Below are positions 9,993-29,908 of a stretch of DNA of 32,000 nucleotides, in pieces. The first letter of the stretch is position 1, and each line of letters opens with the position of its first letter. The stretch is from Wallemia ichthyophaga EXF-994 (taxonomy: Eukaryota; Fungi; Basidiomycota), in the NCBI RefSeq assembly GCF_000400465.1, contig NW_008806295.1, forward strand, positions 60,001 through 92,000. Reading direction: 5' to 3'. The position numbers and the translations under genes are program-made. The notes under the pieces were generated by a model. The model did no database searches, was not told the DNA's origin, and was given only the letters and a program-made list of their open reading frames with translations.

Positions 9993-11050
9993 ATGTCAAC
10001 CGGGTTAGTATTGGACTAGTAATAAATCCTAATAATCCTTATAAAACTTATAGTCAAACTGAGCAGAGTAATAAGGGTACAGATGTTAGATCTTTGATTG
10101 ATGCTGTTGGAAATGCAGGCGTGGATATTGAAGTCAGTGGGCTTGTAAAATTCAAGTGTTTAGACTAACAACTGGGACAGGCTGAGCACGAAGCTATCCT
10201 CCAATCAAATGATATTCTACAATCCAGATATGGCTTACCCACCAGGCACAACAGATCACGTACTCAAGACTTTCTCAACAACTCCATCCTCAGGGATAAA
10301 ATTAGAGCAGCTGCCGCTCCACACCAGTTGCAACGCGTCGACGAGGATTGCTTGCAGTTTCTAGCCCTAGCAACCCAAGCACGCTTGAGGCACTTAATTG
10401 AACTTATGATCCAAGCCAATCACCATCGCAGTGCATCATCACATGTAAACGCACCTACAATTATACACGGTGATCCTCTATACTCCCAGTCTATTCGCAC
10501 TGACACGGATAAACAACTTCAAGCCCTCGAGAAGATTGAAAGGGAGGATGAGACAAAGGCTAGACGTGAGCGTGTCGAGCGTATCACGGTAGAAAGAGAA
10601 GAAAAACAATTCCTTCAATCTCAACAACAACAACAACAACTCGTCGAAGAAGACGACCAGAAGAAAAAAAAGAGGAAAAAAGATATGTCTACAGCCAAGA
10701 ACATGTCCGATGACGTACAGAAGAAGTTATCTGACCAGACTGCTTTAAGGAGTGCTGGTTTGGCTCCCAAGTACAGCTGGCTCACTGGTGGTGCTGTTCC
10801 TTCCCCCCGGTCCTCATCGAACCTCCCAAAACCAAAATTTCAGCCACAACAAAGTAATTTAAATATAAAGACATCACAGCAGAAAACTCTTGGTCCACCG
10901 CCACACGATGCACACCTCGAAAGTGGCACAATCAACTTGAATGACGCTCTATTCGCGTTGGAGAGGGAGCGAGGTATGGGCGCTGGACGTGGGTCAGGCC
11001 AGATGACGGCGTGGAAGAGGTACATAACCTCTGCGCCTGAGGAGTATTAA
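9993..11050 (+). CDS. TAF4: TFIID subunit TAF4 family; introns 10004..10053 (probable) and 10133..10180; alternative start at 9965 possible
   Basis: LIDAVGNAGVDIE/AEHEAI matches the TAF4 'DAL..AGVDL.EE' region. The histone-fold segment reads DCLQFLALATQARLRHLIE. ANxTAL-like DQTALRSAG...KYSWL and the C-terminal INLNDALFALERE also fit. Confidence 0.8.
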
Positions 11051-12217: not shown

Positions 12218-13398
12218 TCAAGACATATCCACCACACACCTCACACACTCACCACCGTGTAGATGCTCAAAAGCCTCATTCATCTCGCTCAGGCTGCGCG
12301 TGTGAGTGTGGAACGAATCCACGTCGAGTTTGTTATTGAGGTAGTCCACAACAATCCCCGGCAGCTCGCTCTTGCCTTTAACACCACCGAAGACGCTACC
12401 TTTCCACACTCTACCGGTGATGAGCTGGAGGGGATTAGTGGATATTTCGTCGGACATTGGCGCAAGACCGATGATGACGCTCTGGCCCCACCCCTTATGG
12501 CAGGCTTCGAGGGCGGATCTCATCACGCCGACGTTTCCAATACATACGATAGTGTGGTCGAGACCGCCTCCAGTGATATCAATCAGGTGCGATTCGATGG
12601 TCCTGTCGATGTGAAGGGGATTTACAAAGTCTGTTGCGCCGTGTTTCAAGGCGTGTTGCTCTTTGTTGCTGTTGGTATCTACTGCAATGATCCTGCGCGC
12701 TCCCGCCGCTTTCGCCCCTTGTACAGCGGCCAGACCTACGCAGCCGGCGCCGAAGACAGCGACCGTCTCGCCCTGCACCTTCTGCTTAGTAGCAGCGCCG
12801 TAGCCGGTAGTTATGCCGCAGCCGAGCAAGCAAGCTTTTTGTAGAGGAGCTTTCTTATCGACCACTGCAACAGAGTGCCTGCTAAGTACGCTGTACTGAG
12901 CGAAAGTGGAAGTGCCCATAAAGTGATTAACAGGGGTACCGCGGCAAGAGAAGCGGGTGCTTCCATCGCTCATAAGGCCCTTGTACTGTGTAGCAACGAG
13001 ACGCTGACATAGATTAGTTTTGCCGGAGATACAGAATGTGCATGAGGTGCACTCGCTGATGTACAGCGGGATCACGTGGTCGCCGGGTGCTATGTCGTCG
13101 ACACCTTCACCTACGCTCTCCACTACGGCACCACCTTCATGACCCAGTATGCACGGGAAATTGCTCAGTAAATCCTTTCCTGTCATGGCGAAAGCATCCG
13201 TGTGGCATACTCCTGTGTGCTCTACGCGCACTCGCACTTCGTCACGCAACGGCGGTGATACTTGTATTTCTTCGACCACGAGCGGAGTGTTGGCTTCCCA
13301 TGCTACGGCTGCCTTGCATGTTATCACTTGCTGCAATCTGTTTAGTGTGCCTGTCTTCTCTGATCTACACTCCCCCTCACATTGGCTGTGTTAGACAT
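12218..13398 (-). CDS. Zn-dependent alcohol dehydrogenase, class-III-like (divergent paralog of S-(hydroxymethyl)glutathione dehydrogenase); intron 13331..13380
   Basis: MSNTAN/QVITCKAAVAW after splicing. Motifs GVCHTD, ILGHEG, structural Zn cysteines (CTSCTFC...NLC), [10 protein letters not shown] and VFGAGCVG are present. Confidence 0.9.
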
Positions 13399-22856: not shown

Positions 22857-23207
22857 CTAGACAGACTTGATATAATTTGAAGGAACCAAACCAATTCTGC
22901 CATTCAAGTTGCAGTTCCACCAATCCCCACTGGGTTTATCAATCACTGACATTCTATCACCACATCTGAAGGTTAAATCTTCACCTGTGGTCTGCTAATA
23001 GTGAGTTGAAATGCCCATCAAATCAAACCATCTCACCCCATTATAATCATATAGCCCTACAACCTGTTCTTGCTTTGGCTGGTGCGATACTCCAGGTTTT
23101 GGCTTTGGCTTTTGTCCGCTAAACAACCCAGGTCTGCTCTCAAAATACTCATCCAACAGCTCAAAGAATGCCTCCTTATCCTCTTGTGAAAAATTAGCAA
23201 AAACCAT
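22857..23207 (-). CDS. Small (~102 aa) SH3-domain protein; intron 22995..23036
   Basis: After splicing: VVGLYDYNG/QTTGEDLTFRCGDRMSVIDKPSGDWWNCNLNGRIGLVPSNYI, which has the canonical SH3 ALYDY, WW and PSNY motifs. The N-terminal helix is DKEAFFELLDEYFESRP. Confidence 0.85.
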
Positions 23208-23255
23208 TGCAATTTGAACGTTGAGTGCAACGTCCATCATCTAATAAACTCAGAG

Positions 23256-25863
23256 ATGGCAAAGGGGTGTGTGGGGACTAAGAGATGGCTATCCACGAAC
23301 ACTCACACTGCACAGTTACGGTTTAGACGATGACAGCGATGAAGATATCGTGCAATTTGACCAAGTTTATCAAGATCATATCGACGGTGATGCCGATGCC
23401 CCACCAACTCTATCTCTATCTCTAGATGGCCATGGTGATGACCACGGCAACGTCCACAGTGATGACGAGGTTATGCTCGACGACGACGACGACGACTACA
23501 ATCATCTTCACAACGACTCGTCTTTCGCGTTTGAAAACACGTTCGACGGTCGTGATAGACCTCATTCAGATAAATTCCCTGCCACTCTCGGTTTACAGCC
23601 TCAGAGAGTACATGTTATGCAGACTTCTTTCTTCCACAACGACGACGACAACGATGTGGGCGACGTCGATACTAAGCGCGGTATTGCCCCGCCCAAGCAA
23701 CACCTCCCAAAGCTGGTACACAACACGCAACACGCAAATCATACAGAGCATGACACACAAAACTCAGATATACAACCTACACCATCTCAATCACCCTTCA
23801 GACCTCCAATTCTGCGTAAATTCAAACACACTGACACCATTTTCCCCAATAATGCCATTTTTCATGATGAAAACTTAGCCCTAGGGAGGTCATTTAGAGT
23901 TGGATTTGATAATTTTGATCAGTTCACTCATATATCCTCTGTATCACCCACTGCAGTCTCATTCAGCAGCTTCTCGAGCCCCACAAGTAGCATTCAGAGT
24001 ATAGAAAAGTCACTCGCACTGCAATTGAAACACACCACCATCACTTTCGATGAGGGTGCTGAGATACCAGCTGCAACAACCAGCCACACGCTCAGATTCG
24101 CTAGCTTTGTCGATACGTTCAACCTCGATGACTTATCCCACGAACCGTCGTATTGGCGACTAGGAAGGGCGTTATTCGACGAGATAGATGTGCGTCTCCC
24201 CGACGACGCTCCCGATACCCTCCGAAACAGAGTGATGGCGGTCCGTCGAAAGGAGGCACTCTCGCAATGGCTACAGAGCACCTTATCCCAAGTGGTGGAA
24301 TCGGAAATGAAACATACTGATGCTGAACCAATTGCACGTATATTCACTCTTCTCAGTGGACACCAAATCGCTCGCGCCGCCCATCTCGCAGCAAGCAACG
24401 GTGACTACAAACTAGCTACCCTAATAACGCAGACACCTGGCGATGCGCAATACAGACACGACCTCACAACGCAGCTACAAAGATGGAAAGAATGCAAAGC
24501 TGATGCGCAAATAGACGGGGGTTACCGCAAGGTGTACGGGTTATTAGCGGGTGTAGTGAATAATCTCGACGGCAATAGTAGCTTCGACGCAGCTGACAAA
24601 GCGGAAGAAATTAATGTATCTGAGGACTTAGATTGGCTGAGATGTTTCGGGCTGAGGCTGTGGTACGCGACGCTTGACGAGGAGGGAGTGAACGAGGCTG
24701 TGAGTGCGTACGACACAGCACATAGCGATGAGGATGGTCGATTCGTACCTACTGCTGCTCCGCCTATCGCGCCTCACTTCCATGTCCACTCCCACTCTAC
24801 CAGCAAACAAGAACCCATCGACGCTCTCTATTCTCTCCTAAAACTATTCATCGACCCCGCGTACACACTCGAAAAAGCCCTCGAGCCTATAGGATTCACC
24901 AGCTCGAAAATGGACTGGCGCGTTAGCTGGCATGTCTACACTATCCTCTCGCGCGTCCTGCGCGTGCGAGATTTCGGCCGTTTTGCCGTGGGGCTGGAGG
25001 AAGAGGAAGGAGTAACGAGCGAGGAGCATTCAGAGGAAGAAAAGGTAGTCCAAGGACATTCGCAGAAGGCCGATGGACTCACAGTGAGCTACGCCGCGCA
25101 AGTTGAGCAGATGGGGCTAGCCGCGTGGAGTGTGTTCATACTACTACACATCGAGCTCGACGAGATGCGAGAGTGGTCCGTGAAGGAGAGTCTAACGCGC
25201 AATGTAGCAGGATACACAGCGGCTGACGAGGCATTCCTCACTGAAACCCTCCTTGTACCCGCCACCTGGCTGTTTAGGGCGAAAGCGACGCATGCGCAGT
25301 ACAAAGGCGACAGATACGCGCAGTACAAGCTGCTGCTAGCGGCGGAGATGCACAGCGAGGCACACGCGGTGGCGGTGGACGTGCTCGCTCCAGAGGCTAT
25401 TATACGCGACGACCTCGCTCTTCTCAGACGCCTGCTCGAGCCACTGGTCACCGAATCCGTCGATGGCTGGGCTAGCAGGGGCAAGTTACTGTGGGAGTAT
25501 GTGGACGTCGTTGAGAAGGTCCCGCAGATGGTCCTCGGCGGGGCTAGAGAGACGGCTGATGCGGCTGAACGGACACACCTTCGCGACATGTATCGCAGAC
25601 TGCCGATACTGATCAAGTCGTTAGGTGGCGTGTGGAAGGGAGACAGCGTGCAGTATCAGATAACGCTTTGTGAAATGACAGAGAGGCTGCTCAATATGGA
25701 GAGAGTACTGCGCGGATACATGAGCACACCGCGCGAATCGCAGAGTGACGTCATGGACCCATTCTACTCGTCCACCTCCACACACCTCCTCCTCACTGAA
25801 GGCGCCAGGCTCGGTTTGCTGGAGAATGAGTCGTATAGCGTATTGAAGACGTCATTAATGTAA
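23256..25863 (+). CDS. NUP96: Nucleoporin Nup96 (Nup145C), apparently without the Nup98 moiety; intron 23267..23315
   Basis: The spliced start is MAKG/YGLDDDSDED. Nup96 motifs LQPQRVHVMQTSFF, LALGRSFRVGF, GDYKLATLITQ, LDWLRCFGLRLWY and LAAWSVFILLH are present. Confidence 0.88.
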
Positions 25864-25914
25864 TCTGTGATGTAATCGACTATTTATTCATTCCTCCTTC
25901 TCGACGACGATGAA

Positions 25915-27231
25915 ATGGGCGTTAAAGATCTAACGGCGGTGATAAAGAGGTTTTGGTGGGTGGATGTGGCCGTAGAGCTGGAGATACACAGCTAACACCT
26001 CGTACAGCCCGGACGTTATAACGAATCTCAGCGGGCGGTGGTGGGCGATCCGCGGTGCTACTGTTGCCATGTGGGGGTGGTTAGACGCGTACACACCGAG
26101 TGAGCACTGACAGCCCACAGCGACACGACGTTGCTCACACAGCGCTACTACTACGGACGGGTGCCGCATCTAGAAGCCCTTGCGCGGCTGGTGCACGACG
26201 CAAACGCCGCCAACGTCCGCCTGATAGGCGTGTTCGACGGTGACGGCCGTCTCGATCAGAAGGGGCGGGAGAGGGAGCGACGTGAGCGCACACGCGCCGT
26301 CCACCGCTCCCGTCTGGCTGGCGAGGAGGCGAGGCTCCACCGGCTCGTGGGTTTCGAAGCGGCTTTCAAAGCGGCAGTGGAAAGCAAGGACTATACGCGC
26401 GTCTGCGGTTATGTGGATAGCGTGGTTATACCCCGCTCGCCCGCCCAGGCACAGCAGCTGCGCGACTTGGAGGAGCGGCGGGTGTATGGGAGTGTGCAGA
26501 GCCACAGAGAGGCAGAGGCATACACACAAACACACCTCAACCACCTCAAGAACTCTACTAACTCGGCTATCACCCGCTACAGCAAGCGTCCACCGAATAG
26601 CGCCGTGTATAGCCGCGTTAAAGACCTCCTCGGGGCTGCTGGTGTTCCTGTAATCACCGTCGACCAATCGCCAAAGCAACTGCACGAGGGGGAAGCACTG
26701 GCTAGTGCACTTGTCTTGCGTGGTTTGGCAGATTACGTGCTTAGTGAGGACACTGATGTGCTCATTTACGGTGCAAAGTTGATTCGCGATGGCGGTGAAG
26801 GCGGTATTGCTAGAGTGTTTGATGGTACTCAACTACACCACGCACTTCACCTCACCCACACGCAACTTATAGACTTTGCACTCCTCGCTGGCACAGATTT
26901 CGCCCTAACCGTTCCTTCTGTTGGACCAATTCGGGCATTAGACTACATTAGGAAGTTTGGCAGTGTCGAAGAGGTACTTATCCAGAATACACCACTCAAG
27001 CAGCTCATCGTGGATAAACACGCACTCAGCATTGATGCCTTCTTGGGTGAATTGAGACAGGCTAGGAAGGTGTACGAGACTTTACCATCGACGCCCCACT
27101 CGATACAGTTTGGTGTGTATAACCAAGATGCTGTTAACAGTATTCTCCACCAAGACAAGATTGAAAGAGGAACCAAGTCTTGGGGAGAAGACGACCATCA
27201 CTACAAACACCTTAAAGAATGGGGAATGTAA
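25915..27231 (+). CDS. FEN1/XPG (Rad2) family 5' nuclease-like protein (PIN plus H3TH); introns 25956..26007 and 26071..26120
   Basis: The spliced N-terminus is MGVKDLTAVIKRFC...TVAI/DTTLLTQR. Motifs GVFDG, EGEALAS, VLSEDTDVLIYG, FALLAGTDF and SVGPIRALDYIRKFGSVE follow. Confidence 0.8.

Positions 27232-28729: not shown

Positions 28730-29908
<1,179 letters not shown>

What the first reader, a model, noticed from the sequence alone, without database searches (positions are those of the whole stretch)
23256..25863. Nup96 appears encoded as a stand-alone gene, split from Nup98 at the autoproteolysis site
Seen: the gene starts MAKG/YGLDDDSDED. The 48 bp upstream run into the start of an opposite-strand gene, leaving no room for GLFG repeats or an autoprotease domain, and no HF|S site is present. 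Established: yeast Nup145, S. pombe Nup189 and human NUP98-96 are single precursors self-cleaved at HF|S, and mature human Nup96 begins SKYGLQDSDEEE. Inference: gene fission occurred right at the cleavage junction, with a new ATG and micro-exon added, so cleavage is no longer needed and the two nucleoporins can be regulated independently.
Basis: partly seen in the sequence, partly recalled or inferred. Interest (0 to 1): 0.7.

Follow-up and report, generated by a model that had tools for sequence, protein, structure and literature searches.

The report
Stand-alone Nup96 gene in Wallemia
In the salt-loving fungus Wallemia ichthyophaga the nuclear-pore protein Nup96 has its own gene that starts at the point where other fungi and animals cut it out of a Nup98-Nup96 precursor; the same split turns up separately in two other basidiomycete groups, giving natural test cases for why self-cleavage is usually kept.

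Summary
Window 23256-25863 (+) encodes an 852-aa Nup96 (Pfam PF12110, E=1.4e-89; human Nup96 structures, E=1.8e-55). It has an 11-nt first coding exon (ATGGCAAAGGG), a 49-nt GT..AG intron and one long exon. The product begins MAKG-YGLDDDSDED.

An SH3-domain gene starts on the opposite strand 48 bp upstream. No GLFG repeats, autoprotease domain or HF|S site occur anywhere in the 32 kb.

The window is Wallemia ichthyophaga. Three other Wallemia-clade assemblies show the same neighbours, the same stand-alone state and the same intron position.

The split is not phylum-wide. Nup98-Nup96 is one continuous ORF with HF|[ST][KR]YGL in Ustilaginomycotina, Tremellomycetes, Cantharellales, Auricularia, Puccinia, Mixia and Atractiella. 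It is split in Wallemia, Microbotryomycetes and crown Agaricomycetes. The Nup96 tree needs three changes of state, and one clade of all split forms is rejected (AU p=0.003).

In the two other split groups the separate Nup98 gene stops right after the F of HF (58 of 58 sequences), and 20 of those 58 have lost the His. Their Nup96 starts M-[A/T/V]-[K/R]-F.

I did not find Wallemia's own Nup98. The gene is an ordinary Nup96 orthologue in an arrangement already known from plants. The recurrent, exact fission in fungi appears undescribed in the literature I could search.

The parts
23208..23255 (.). 48-bp gap between the divergent start codons of the SH3 gene (-) and Nup96 (+). Any promoter and 5'UTR must fit here or overlap the neighbour.
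   Evidence: The same gap is 27 bp in W. mellicola L001, 48 bp in Wallemia sp. L005 and about 100 bp in L004.
23256..23266 (+). Nup96 exon 1, an 11-nt coding micro-exon ATGGCAAAGGG (M-A-K plus the first two bases of a Gly codon).
   Evidence: Homologous exon 1 is ATGGCACGGGG (W. mellicola), ATGGCAAGGGG (L005) and ATGCCAATAAATAGAAGAGG (L004). The public model P0001 uses the same start.
23267..23315 (+). 49-nt phase-2 intron (GTGTGT...CACAG) splitting the Gly codon just before Y-G-L.
   Evidence: Position and phase are the same in L001, L004 and L005, while the intron sequences differ. Splicing was not confirmed with RNA data.
23316..25863 (+). Nup96 exon 2 including the TAA stop. Together with exon 1 it gives an 852-aa protein.
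23317..23346 (+). YGLDDDSDED, the motif that follows the HF|[ST][KR] cleavage site in fused Nup98-Nup96. In human and yeast this is the Nup96 N-terminal segment reported to dock non-covalently on the Nup98 autoprotease domain.
   Evidence: Alignment of junctions. The docking role comes from the literature cited in PMC4483485 and was not tested here.
23881..23907 (+). LGRSFRVGF, a motif conserved in all Nup96/Nup145C relatives seen (GRSFRVGWGP). It probably belongs to the beta segment that binds Sec13.
   Evidence: The motif is visible in P0005, P0022, P0031 and P0032. The Sec13-binding role is my own knowledge of Nup145C-Sec13 structures and was not tested.
24337..25293 (+). Pfam Nup96 domain (PF12110), the alpha-helical scaffold part.
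   Evidence: residues 357-675 of the ORF translation starting at 23269, profile 2-295 of 295. (human Nup96 5a9q E=1.8e-55; yeast Nup145C E about 1e-16).
22857..23207 (-). Divergent neighbour: a 101-aa SH3-domain protein. Exon 1 is 23207-23037, the intron 23036-22992 and exon 2 22991-22857. It is not part of Nup96 but blocks any upstream Nup98 exon.
   Evidence: The orthologue carries Pfam SH3_1 in L001 and L004.
25915..27231 (+). Downstream neighbour: an XPG_I-domain nuclease-like gene (starts MGVKDL, with introns). One public model wrongly merges it with Nup96.

Best explanation
This is the Wallemia ichthyophaga orthologue of Nup96/Nup145C, the Y-complex scaffold nucleoporin, encoded by its own gene rather than as the C-terminal half of a self-cleaving Nup98-Nup96 precursor.

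How it works:
- Transcription starts in or next to a 48-bp divergent intergenic region.
- A 49-nt intron joins an 11-nt first coding exon to the main exon.
- Translation gives M-A-K-G-YGLDDDSDED.... The protein therefore begins about where autoproteolysis would have left it, and no HF|S site or protease domain is needed.

Origin: the arrangement arose by gene fission exactly at the scissile bond in the Wallemia lineage. The micro-exon, the phase-2 intron and the extra Gly are that lineage's own signature. It is one of about three parallel fissions in Basidiomycota; the others are in Microbotryomycetes and crown Agaricomycetes.

Inferred, not shown:
- The initiator Met is removed, because Ala is at position 2, leaving a small residue followed by K/R, like the natural S-K/R end.
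- The retained YGLDD+acidic segment still docks on the autoprotease domain of a separately encoded Nup98.
- Wallemia's Nup98 ends at or near the F of HF, as it does in the other split lineages.
For: Identity: PF12110 E=1.4e-89. Human Nup96 and yeast Nup145C structures match.

Stand-alone state:
- An opposite-strand SH3 gene starts 48 bp upstream.
- No FG region or autoprotease coding sequence occurs in the 32 kb.
- The order SH3(-)|Nup96(+)|XPG_I(+)|E1-beta(-) is the same in W. mellicola, a Logan Wallemia sp. and a 47%-identical ENA relative.
- Exon 1 and the intron position are conserved across these genomes.

Junction:
- All 47 fused relatives read HF|[ST], followed by [KR]YGL in most.
- The ORF is continuous across the junction in Ceratobasidium and Vanrija.

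Distribution:
- Fused and split states were named.
- The tree needs 3 changes of state.
- AU tests reject all split forms as one clade (p=0.003) and Wallemia plus crown Agaricomycetes as one clade (p=0.02).

Partner genes in the other split lineages:
- 58 stand-alone Nup98 sequences end exactly at xF-stop: 38 HF, 14 EF and 6 others.
- TTC TGA was verified in Trametes and Rhodotorula, with no Nup96 within 8 kb downstream.

Experimental support from the literature (S. pombe, PMC4483485):
- Nup98 and Nup96 expressed from separate loci rescue nup189 deletion.
- An uncleavable Nup98 with a tail does not rescue.
Against: - Wallemia's own Nup98 was not found; it was absent from the 120 listed of 181 hits.
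- There are no RNA data for the 49-nt intron or the transcription start.
- The extra Gly shifts the register by one residue relative to S-K-Y-G-L. The distant relative L004 starts MPINRRG-YGL, so a fixed free N-terminus is not strictly conserved in this clade.
- The Nup96 gene tree alone does not reject a Wallemia plus Microbotryomycetes clade (AU p=0.11). The count of three origins therefore leans on accepted taxonomy.
- The groups tested with AU were chosen after seeing the tree.
Confidence: 0.85

Rival explanations
1. Annotation or assembly artefact. On this reading the gene is really the 3' part of a fused Nup98-Nup96 gene whose upstream exons were missed or lie across a misassembly, and the acceptor at 23315 is spliced to a far-upstream Nup98 exon.
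For: The first coding exon is only 11 nt and the intron is unverified by RNA data. Micro-exon starts are a common gene-model artefact.
Against: - There is no FG or autoprotease coding sequence in the 23 kb upstream or the 6 kb downstream.
- A conserved gene on the opposite strand starts 48 bp upstream.
- Four independent assemblies show the same layout.
- The exon 1 reading frame is conserved while the intron sequence diverges.
Confidence: 0.03
2. The split is ancestral and general in Basidiomycota, from one old fission, so the window shows only the ordinary phylum-wide state.
For: About 25 basidiomycete Nup96 models of 740-1019 aa with PF12110 only came up in the first search. That search could not return fused proteins longer than 1,512 aa.
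Against: - Continuous fused genes with an intact HF|[ST] occur in Ustilaginomycotina (including Malassezia), Tremellomycetes, Cantharellales, Auricularia, Puccinia, Mixia and Atractiella.
- One clade of all split forms is rejected (AU p=0.003).
- Re-fusion that restores a working protease site several times over is implausible.
Confidence: 0.03
3. Translation really starts at the first in-frame ATG of the long exon (Met57, 23473). On this reading the MAKG-YGLDDDSDED segment is untranslated 5' leader.
For: No protein or RNA evidence was available here, and the region 23316-23472 is acidic and of low complexity.
Against: - The YGLD[DE]-S-SDE[DE] segment and the short exon-1 ORF are conserved at the protein level in four Wallemia-clade genomes, down to 47% overall identity.
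- The segment matches the motif that follows the cleavage site in every fused relative.
Confidence: 0.04
4. Wallemia did not split the gene independently but shares a single fission with Microbotryomycetes. That gives two origins in the phylum rather than three.
For: - AU p=0.11 for a Wallemia plus Microbotryomycetes clade on the Nup96 tree.
- Both start M-A-K/R and keep [F/Y]GL.
- Strongly supported branches force only 2 changes.
Against: - Taxonomy places Microbotryomycetes in Pucciniomycotina, alongside fused Puccinia, Mixia and Atractiella. Wallemia sits in a separate subphylum.
- Wallemia has an extra Gly and a phase-2 intron at the start, whereas Microbotryum has neither.
Confidence: 0.1

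Closest known systems
Nup98-Nup96 autoproteolytic precursors (human NUP98-96, S. cerevisiae Nup145, S. pombe Nup189; peptidase family S59)
   Same: The Nup96 part is orthologous. The N-terminal YGLDD+acidic motif is the one that follows the HF|S bond.
   Different: There is no GLFG region, no autoprotease domain and no HF|S in the gene or the window. The N-terminus is made by translation initiation plus splicing, not by self-cleavage.
Separate Nup96 (MOS3/SAR3) and Nup98a/b genes of Arabidopsis and most land plants
   Same: Nup96 and Nup98 are encoded by separate genes, usually at different loci (PMC8685260).
   Different: This is an independent event in a fungal lineage. The same review states that animals and fungi use one gene. 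Here the start is a micro-exon placed one residue from the ancestral cleavage position.
Engineered split in S. pombe (Asakawa et al. 2015, PMC4483485)
   Same: Nup98 and Nup96 expressed from two loci rescue nup189 deletion. A Nup98 that keeps an uncleavable tail is non-functional. This matches the natural stand-alone Nup98 genes, which stop exactly after F.
   Different: That split is a laboratory construct. The Wallemia arrangement is natural, fixed and conserved across a clade.
Stand-alone Nup96 and Nup98 of Microbotryomycetes and crown Agaricomycetes (found here)
   Same: The boundary is the same: Nup96 starts M-[A/T/V]-[K/R]-F and Nup98 ends ...xF-stop.
   Different: Those lineages have no intron or extra Gly at the start (Microbotryum). 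They form separate clades on the Nup96 tree.
S. cerevisiae Nup100 and Nup116 (own knowledge)
   Same: They are GLFG nucleoporins with a C-terminal autoprotease-fold domain and no attached Nup96 part. This shows that such a domain works at a protein's C-terminus without cleavage.
   Different: They are paralogues that coexist with a fused Nup145. They were not examined here.
Dynein heavy chain encoded by two genes in Agaricomycetes (PMC4540427)
   Same: It is a precedent for fission of an essential large gene in basidiomycetes.
   Different: It is an unrelated protein and no protease site is involved.

Membership tests
Nup96 / Nup145C (Y-complex scaffold nucleoporin, Pfam PF12110) | Nup96 domain above Pfam's gathering score | tested here: met
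   300.5 bits against a cut-off of 25, E=1.4e-89, profile 2-295 of 295.
Nup96 / Nup145C (Y-complex scaffold nucleoporin, Pfam PF12110) | Sequence homology to experimentally solved Nup96/Nup145C | tested here: met
   Human Nup96 5a9q E=1.8e-55; Xenopus Nup96 E about 1e-50; yeast Nup145C 4xmm/3bg0 E=1e-14 to 1e-17.
Nup96 / Nup145C (Y-complex scaffold nucleoporin, Pfam PF12110) | N-terminal [S/T]-[K/R]-[Y/F]-G-L followed by an acidic/Ser run (the post-cleavage end) | tested here: met
   A-K-G-YGLDDDSDED after the initiator Met, with one extra Gly relative to the fused consensus.
Nup96 / Nup145C (Y-complex scaffold nucleoporin, Pfam PF12110) | Binds Sec13 and assembles into the Nup107-160/Nup84 Y-complex | not testable with these tools
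   Only the conserved GRSFRVG[WF] motif is present (23881-23907).
Self-cleaving Nup98-Nup96 precursor (peptidase S59) | Nucleoporin2 autoprotease domain (PF04096) N-terminal to Nup96 in one ORF | tested here: not met
   The only Pfam hit is PF12110. tblastn with two autoprotease domains found nothing in the 32 kb.
Self-cleaving Nup98-Nup96 precursor (peptidase S59) | HF|[S/T] scissile site | tested here: not met
   It is absent from the gene. It is present in 47 of 47 fused relatives.
Self-cleaving Nup98-Nup96 precursor (peptidase S59) | GLFG/FG repeat region | tested here: not met
   No GLFG is present in any frame of the window.
Split Nup98 / Nup96 gene pair (as in most land plants) | Nup96 ORF with its own start codon at or near the ancestral cleavage position, bounded upstream by another gene | tested here: met
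Split Nup98 / Nup96 gene pair (as in most land plants) | A separate Nup98 gene (FG region plus autoprotease domain) elsewhere in the same genome | tested here: inconclusive
   It was not found for Wallemia; no named Wallemia hit appears among the 120 listed of 181. It was found for Agaricomycetes and Microbotryomycetes.
Split Nup98 / Nup96 gene pair (as in most land plants) | Independent transcription of the Nup96 gene | not testable with these tools
   No transcript data were available. Only the 48-bp divergent gap argues for a separate promoter.

The most novel reading that the evidence does not exclude
Nup98-Nup96 has been split at exactly the scissile peptide bond at least three separate times within one fungal phylum (Wallemiomycetes, Microbotryomycetes, crown Agaricomycetes), in addition to plants.

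Each time the result is a Nup98 that stops right after the F of HF and a Nup96 that starts M-[small]-[K/R]-[F/Y]. The catalytic His then drifts, being lost in 20 of 58 stand-alone Nup98 sequences.

This would mean that what selection preserves is the pair of termini that autoproteolysis creates, not the proteolysis itself. Closely related fused and split fungi would then serve as natural experiments on why the precursor is otherwise kept.
Probability: 0.7. Interest if true: 0.6.

Novelty: new member of a known kind. Interest (0 to 1): 0.48.

Why it matters
Why Nup98 and Nup96 are made from one self-cleaving precursor in most eukaryotes is unresolved. The requirement for cleavage differs between human cells and yeasts (PMC4483485).

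Fungal lineages that have dispensed with the precursor keep the two termini to the residue and let the catalytic His decay. That points to the termini, and the Nup98 to Nup96 docking they allow, as the constrained feature.

Split groups such as Rhodotorula, Schizophyllum and Wallemia sit next to fused ones such as Ustilago, Cryptococcus-type yeasts and Ceratobasidium. Stoichiometry, regulation and assembly order can therefore be compared between relatives.

A review states that fungi use one gene (PMC8685260), so the fungal split seems not to be common knowledge. On the practical side, one public Wallemia gene model merges Nup96 with the next gene and needs correcting.

Tried and rejected
- Bird autoprotease domain as query. 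All 120 listed hits were vertebrates and no fungus was shown, so one capped search was wasted.
- Synthetic consensus autoprotease domain as probe. It was joined to the Ceratobasidium FG region to set the length window and was used only as a search probe. It recovered stand-alone Nup98 genes of Agaricomycetes and Microbotryomycetes, but no named Wallemia protein among the 120 listed of 181.
- P0425/L003 as a possible Wallemia Nup98. It is an ENA metagenome sequence that ends GVPGF-stop. I set it aside because its KRLRNLDG..F.DF segment resembles the Rhodotorula and Sporobolomyces sequences. Its GC of 55%, against 30-49% in the Wallemia-clade loci, gives no link to Wallemia either.
- Adjacency test: I asked whether the split partners sit next to each other, as after an in-place stop codon. 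They do not in Trametes or Rhodotorula. Gautieria Nup98 and Nup96 lie on contigs of different length.
- Ancestral-intron test: I asked whether the Wallemia intron is inherited from the fused gene. Ceratobasidium and Vanrija have no intron within 60 codons of the junction.
- The intron's 3' end, read in the exon-2 frame, spells H-S before YGL in the window and in L005, which looks like a relic of HFS. W. mellicola reads Y-R there, so this is most likely just the CACAG acceptor.
- Literature searches for a described fungal split found none. The library lacks most subscription journals.
Full report
**What is in the window**

The region 23256-25863 on the + strand holds a two-exon gene.
- Exon 1 is 11 nt (23256-23266, ATGGCAAAGGG).
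- The intron is 49 nt (23267-23315, GTGTGT...CACAG).
- Exon 2 runs from 23316 to the TAA at 25861-25863.

The spliced product has 852 residues and begins MAKGYGLDDDSDED. Read unspliced, the ATG frame stops after 25 codons. The long ORF has no in-frame ATG before residue 57 (23473), so splicing is needed to translate the conserved N-terminus.

Pfam gives one family, Nup96 (PF12110), at E=1.4e-89 over the whole profile. The protein matches solved human Nup96 (E=1.8e-55), Xenopus Nup96 and yeast Nup145C.

**Surroundings**

A 101-aa SH3-domain gene lies on the opposite strand (23207-23037 and 22991-22857, with a 45-nt intron).

Downstream, an XPG_I-domain gene starts at 25915, followed by a pyruvate-dehydrogenase-E1-beta-like gene on the minus strand.

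A six-frame scan found no GLFG run and no HF[ST] within a gene frame. tblastn with two autoprotease domains and one FG region found nothing better than E=0.1 anywhere in the 32 kb. The other ORFs I scanned are unrelated housekeeping genes.

**Source and close relatives**

The protein is 100% identical over its length to a Wallemia ichthyophaga entry (P0001), apart from two substitutions and a divergent last three residues.

Three further assemblies carry the same gene order, SH3(-)|Nup96(+)|XPG_I(+)|E1-beta(-):
- W. mellicola (56% identity),
- a Wallemia sp. from a Logan assembly (about 70% identity),
- an AT-rich relative from an ENA metagenome (47% identity).

In all of them a short first coding exon ends in two G's, and a phase-2 intron sits directly before Y-G-L. 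Exon 1 reads ATGGCACGGGG, ATGGCAAGGGG and ATGCCAATAAATAGAAGAGG in the three. The intron sequences do not resemble each other.

Conservation of the tiny ORF and of the splice position, against a diverged intron, is comparative evidence that the start and splice are real. I had no RNA data.

**Is the split general in the phylum?**

No. The first homologue search could only return proteins up to 1.75 times the query length. It showed about 25 basidiomycete stand-alone Nup96 models.

An unfiltered HMMER search of 1.84 billion representatives showed both states among the closest relatives. Naming the representatives gave the following.

| State | Lineages |
|---|---|
| Fused, 1,600-2,100 aa | Ustilaginomycotina: Ustilago, Tilletiaria, Tilletiopsis, Malassezia |
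| Fused | Tremellomycetes: Vanrija, Kockovaella, Naganishia |
| Fused | Cantharellales (Ceratobasidium, Tulasnella) and Auricularia |
| Fused | Pucciniomycotina: Puccinia, Mixia, Atractiella |
| Fused | Outgroups: Calcarisporiella, Basidiobolus |
| Split | Wallemia |
| Split | Microbotryomycetes: Microbotryum, Meredithblackwellia, Sporobolomyces, Rhodotorula, Rhodosporidiobolus |
| Split | Crown Agaricomycetes: Gomphales, Hymenochaetales, Gloeophyllales, Polyporales, Russulales, Boletales, Agaricales |

All 47 fused proteins keep HF|S (32) or HF|T (15), followed by [KR]YGL in most. In Ceratobasidium and Vanrija the ORF runs uninterrupted for 60 codons on each side of the junction. These are therefore real fused genes, and they have no intron where Wallemia has one.

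**How many fissions?**

Trees of the Nup96 part follow the accepted classification and need three changes of state (113 rows with FastTree; 39 named rows with IQ-TREE).

AU tests gave these results:
- All split forms as one clade: rejected, p=0.003.
- Wallemia plus crown Agaricomycetes as one clade: rejected, p=0.02.
- Wallemia plus Microbotryomycetes as one clade: not rejected, p=0.11.

The third origin therefore rests on two things. Taxonomy places Microbotryomycetes with the fused Puccinia, Mixia and Atractiella in Pucciniomycotina, and Wallemia in its own subphylum. The gene structures also differ: Microbotryum starts ATGGCCAAGTTTGGCTTG with no intron and no extra Gly.

The groups were defined after I had seen the first tree, which weakens the formal p-values.

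**The partner gene**

I searched with a synthetic consensus autoprotease domain, used only as a probe, with a length window that excluded fused proteins. This returned stand-alone Nup98 genes carrying PF04096 plus FG repeats and no PF12110.

- Every one of the 58 that reach their true C-terminus ends exactly at the residue matching the F of HF.
- The last two residues are HF in 38, EF in 14 (Phallomycetidae and Microbotryomycetes), and WF, SF, QF, RF or GF in 6.
- In Trametes and Rhodotorula the DNA reads TTC TGA, and no Nup96 lies within 8 kb downstream.
- The matching Nup96 genes start MARF (29), MTRF (8), MAKF (3), MVRF (1), MAKG (1) or MARG (1).

So both halves of the cut are reproduced to the residue, and the catalytic His is free to change once there is nothing to cleave.

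I could not find Wallemia's own Nup98. It was not among the 120 listed of 181 hits, and the capped searches were then exhausted.

**Mechanism**

Shown:
- The gene is autonomous.
- It encodes a full Nup96.
- Its N-terminus corresponds to the post-cleavage end plus one Gly.

Inferred from established rules and the literature:
- Ala (or Thr/Val) at position 2 leads to removal of the initiator Met, leaving a small residue followed by K/R, much like the natural S-K/R end.
- The YGLDD+acidic segment docks non-covalently on the Nup98 autoprotease domain, as proposed for human and yeast (cited in PMC4483485).
- The fission probably went through duplication and complementary loss. A Nup98 with an uncleavable tail is non-functional in S. 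pombe, while separate Nup98 and Nup96 genes are functional. That would explain why only boundaries at the scissile bond survive.

The distant Wallemia-like relative starts MPINRRG-YGL. In this clade the conserved element is therefore [K/R]-G-YGLD, not a fixed free end.

**Comparison with what is known, and verdict**

- The protein is an ordinary Nup96 orthologue.
- It fails every defining feature of the self-cleaving precursor: domain, site and FG repeats.
- It fits the split arrangement known from most land plants (PMC8685260).
- That review says fungi use one gene, and seven literature searches found no description of a fungal split. The library lacks most subscription journals, so this is absence of evidence only.

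I rate the window's feature a new member of a known kind. Interest is moderate, and it comes mainly from the recurrent, residue-exact fission and the decay of the His, which make the purpose of Nup98-Nup96 autoproteolysis testable in related fungi.

Noticed in passing
window 25850-27231: The public W. ichthyophaga model E3P98_00468 (P0001, 1,239 aa; Pfam Nup96 plus XPG_I) merges Nup96 with the downstream XPG_I gene. It does so through a predicted intron that removes the last three codons and the TAA. The W. mellicola annotation keeps the two genes apart.
   Followed up: partly
window 23208-23255; L001 9974-10000; L005 9901-9948: The start codons of the divergent SH3 and Nup96 genes are only 48 bp apart (27 bp in W. 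mellicola). The promoters and 5'UTRs of the two genes must overlap or lie inside each other's coding sequence.
   Followed up: no
P0321, P0361, P0374, P0380, P0386, P0390, P0415 and others: In the split lineages the catalytic His of the Nup98 C-terminal HF is replaced in 20 of 58 sequences. It is EF in Phallomycetidae and Microbotryomycetes, QF in Agrocybe, WF in Mycena and RF in Jaapia. All 47 fused proteins keep HF[ST].
   Followed up: partly
L003 1-3917 (ENA metagenome scaffold, P0425): A stand-alone Nup98 ends GVPGF-stop and is followed by more than 700 bp without a called gene. The locus is 55% GC and of unknown lineage. Its KRLRNLDG motif resembles the Rhodotorula and Sporobolomyces sequences. 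It may be a further split group in or near Pucciniomycotina.
   Followed up: partly
P0331, P0338, P0341, P0349, P0352 (Logan contigs): These ORF-level calls end ...AHF|SRYVC-stop. That looks like an intron donor three codons after the scissile bond in an unidentified fused lineage. The known S. pombe alternative intron yields Nup98 plus a short tail, so this could be related.
   Followed up: no
window 23301-23316; L005 about 10002-10012: Read in the exon-2 frame, the last bases of the intron spell H-S before YGL (CAC AG|T). This mimics a relic of HFS. W. mellicola reads Y-R at the same place, so it is probably only the acceptor consensus.
   Followed up: yes
window 12218-13336 (-) and 28787-29908 (+): Two zinc-type alcohol dehydrogenase family genes (ADH_N plus ADH_zinc_N) lie 15 kb apart in the same window.
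   Followed up: no
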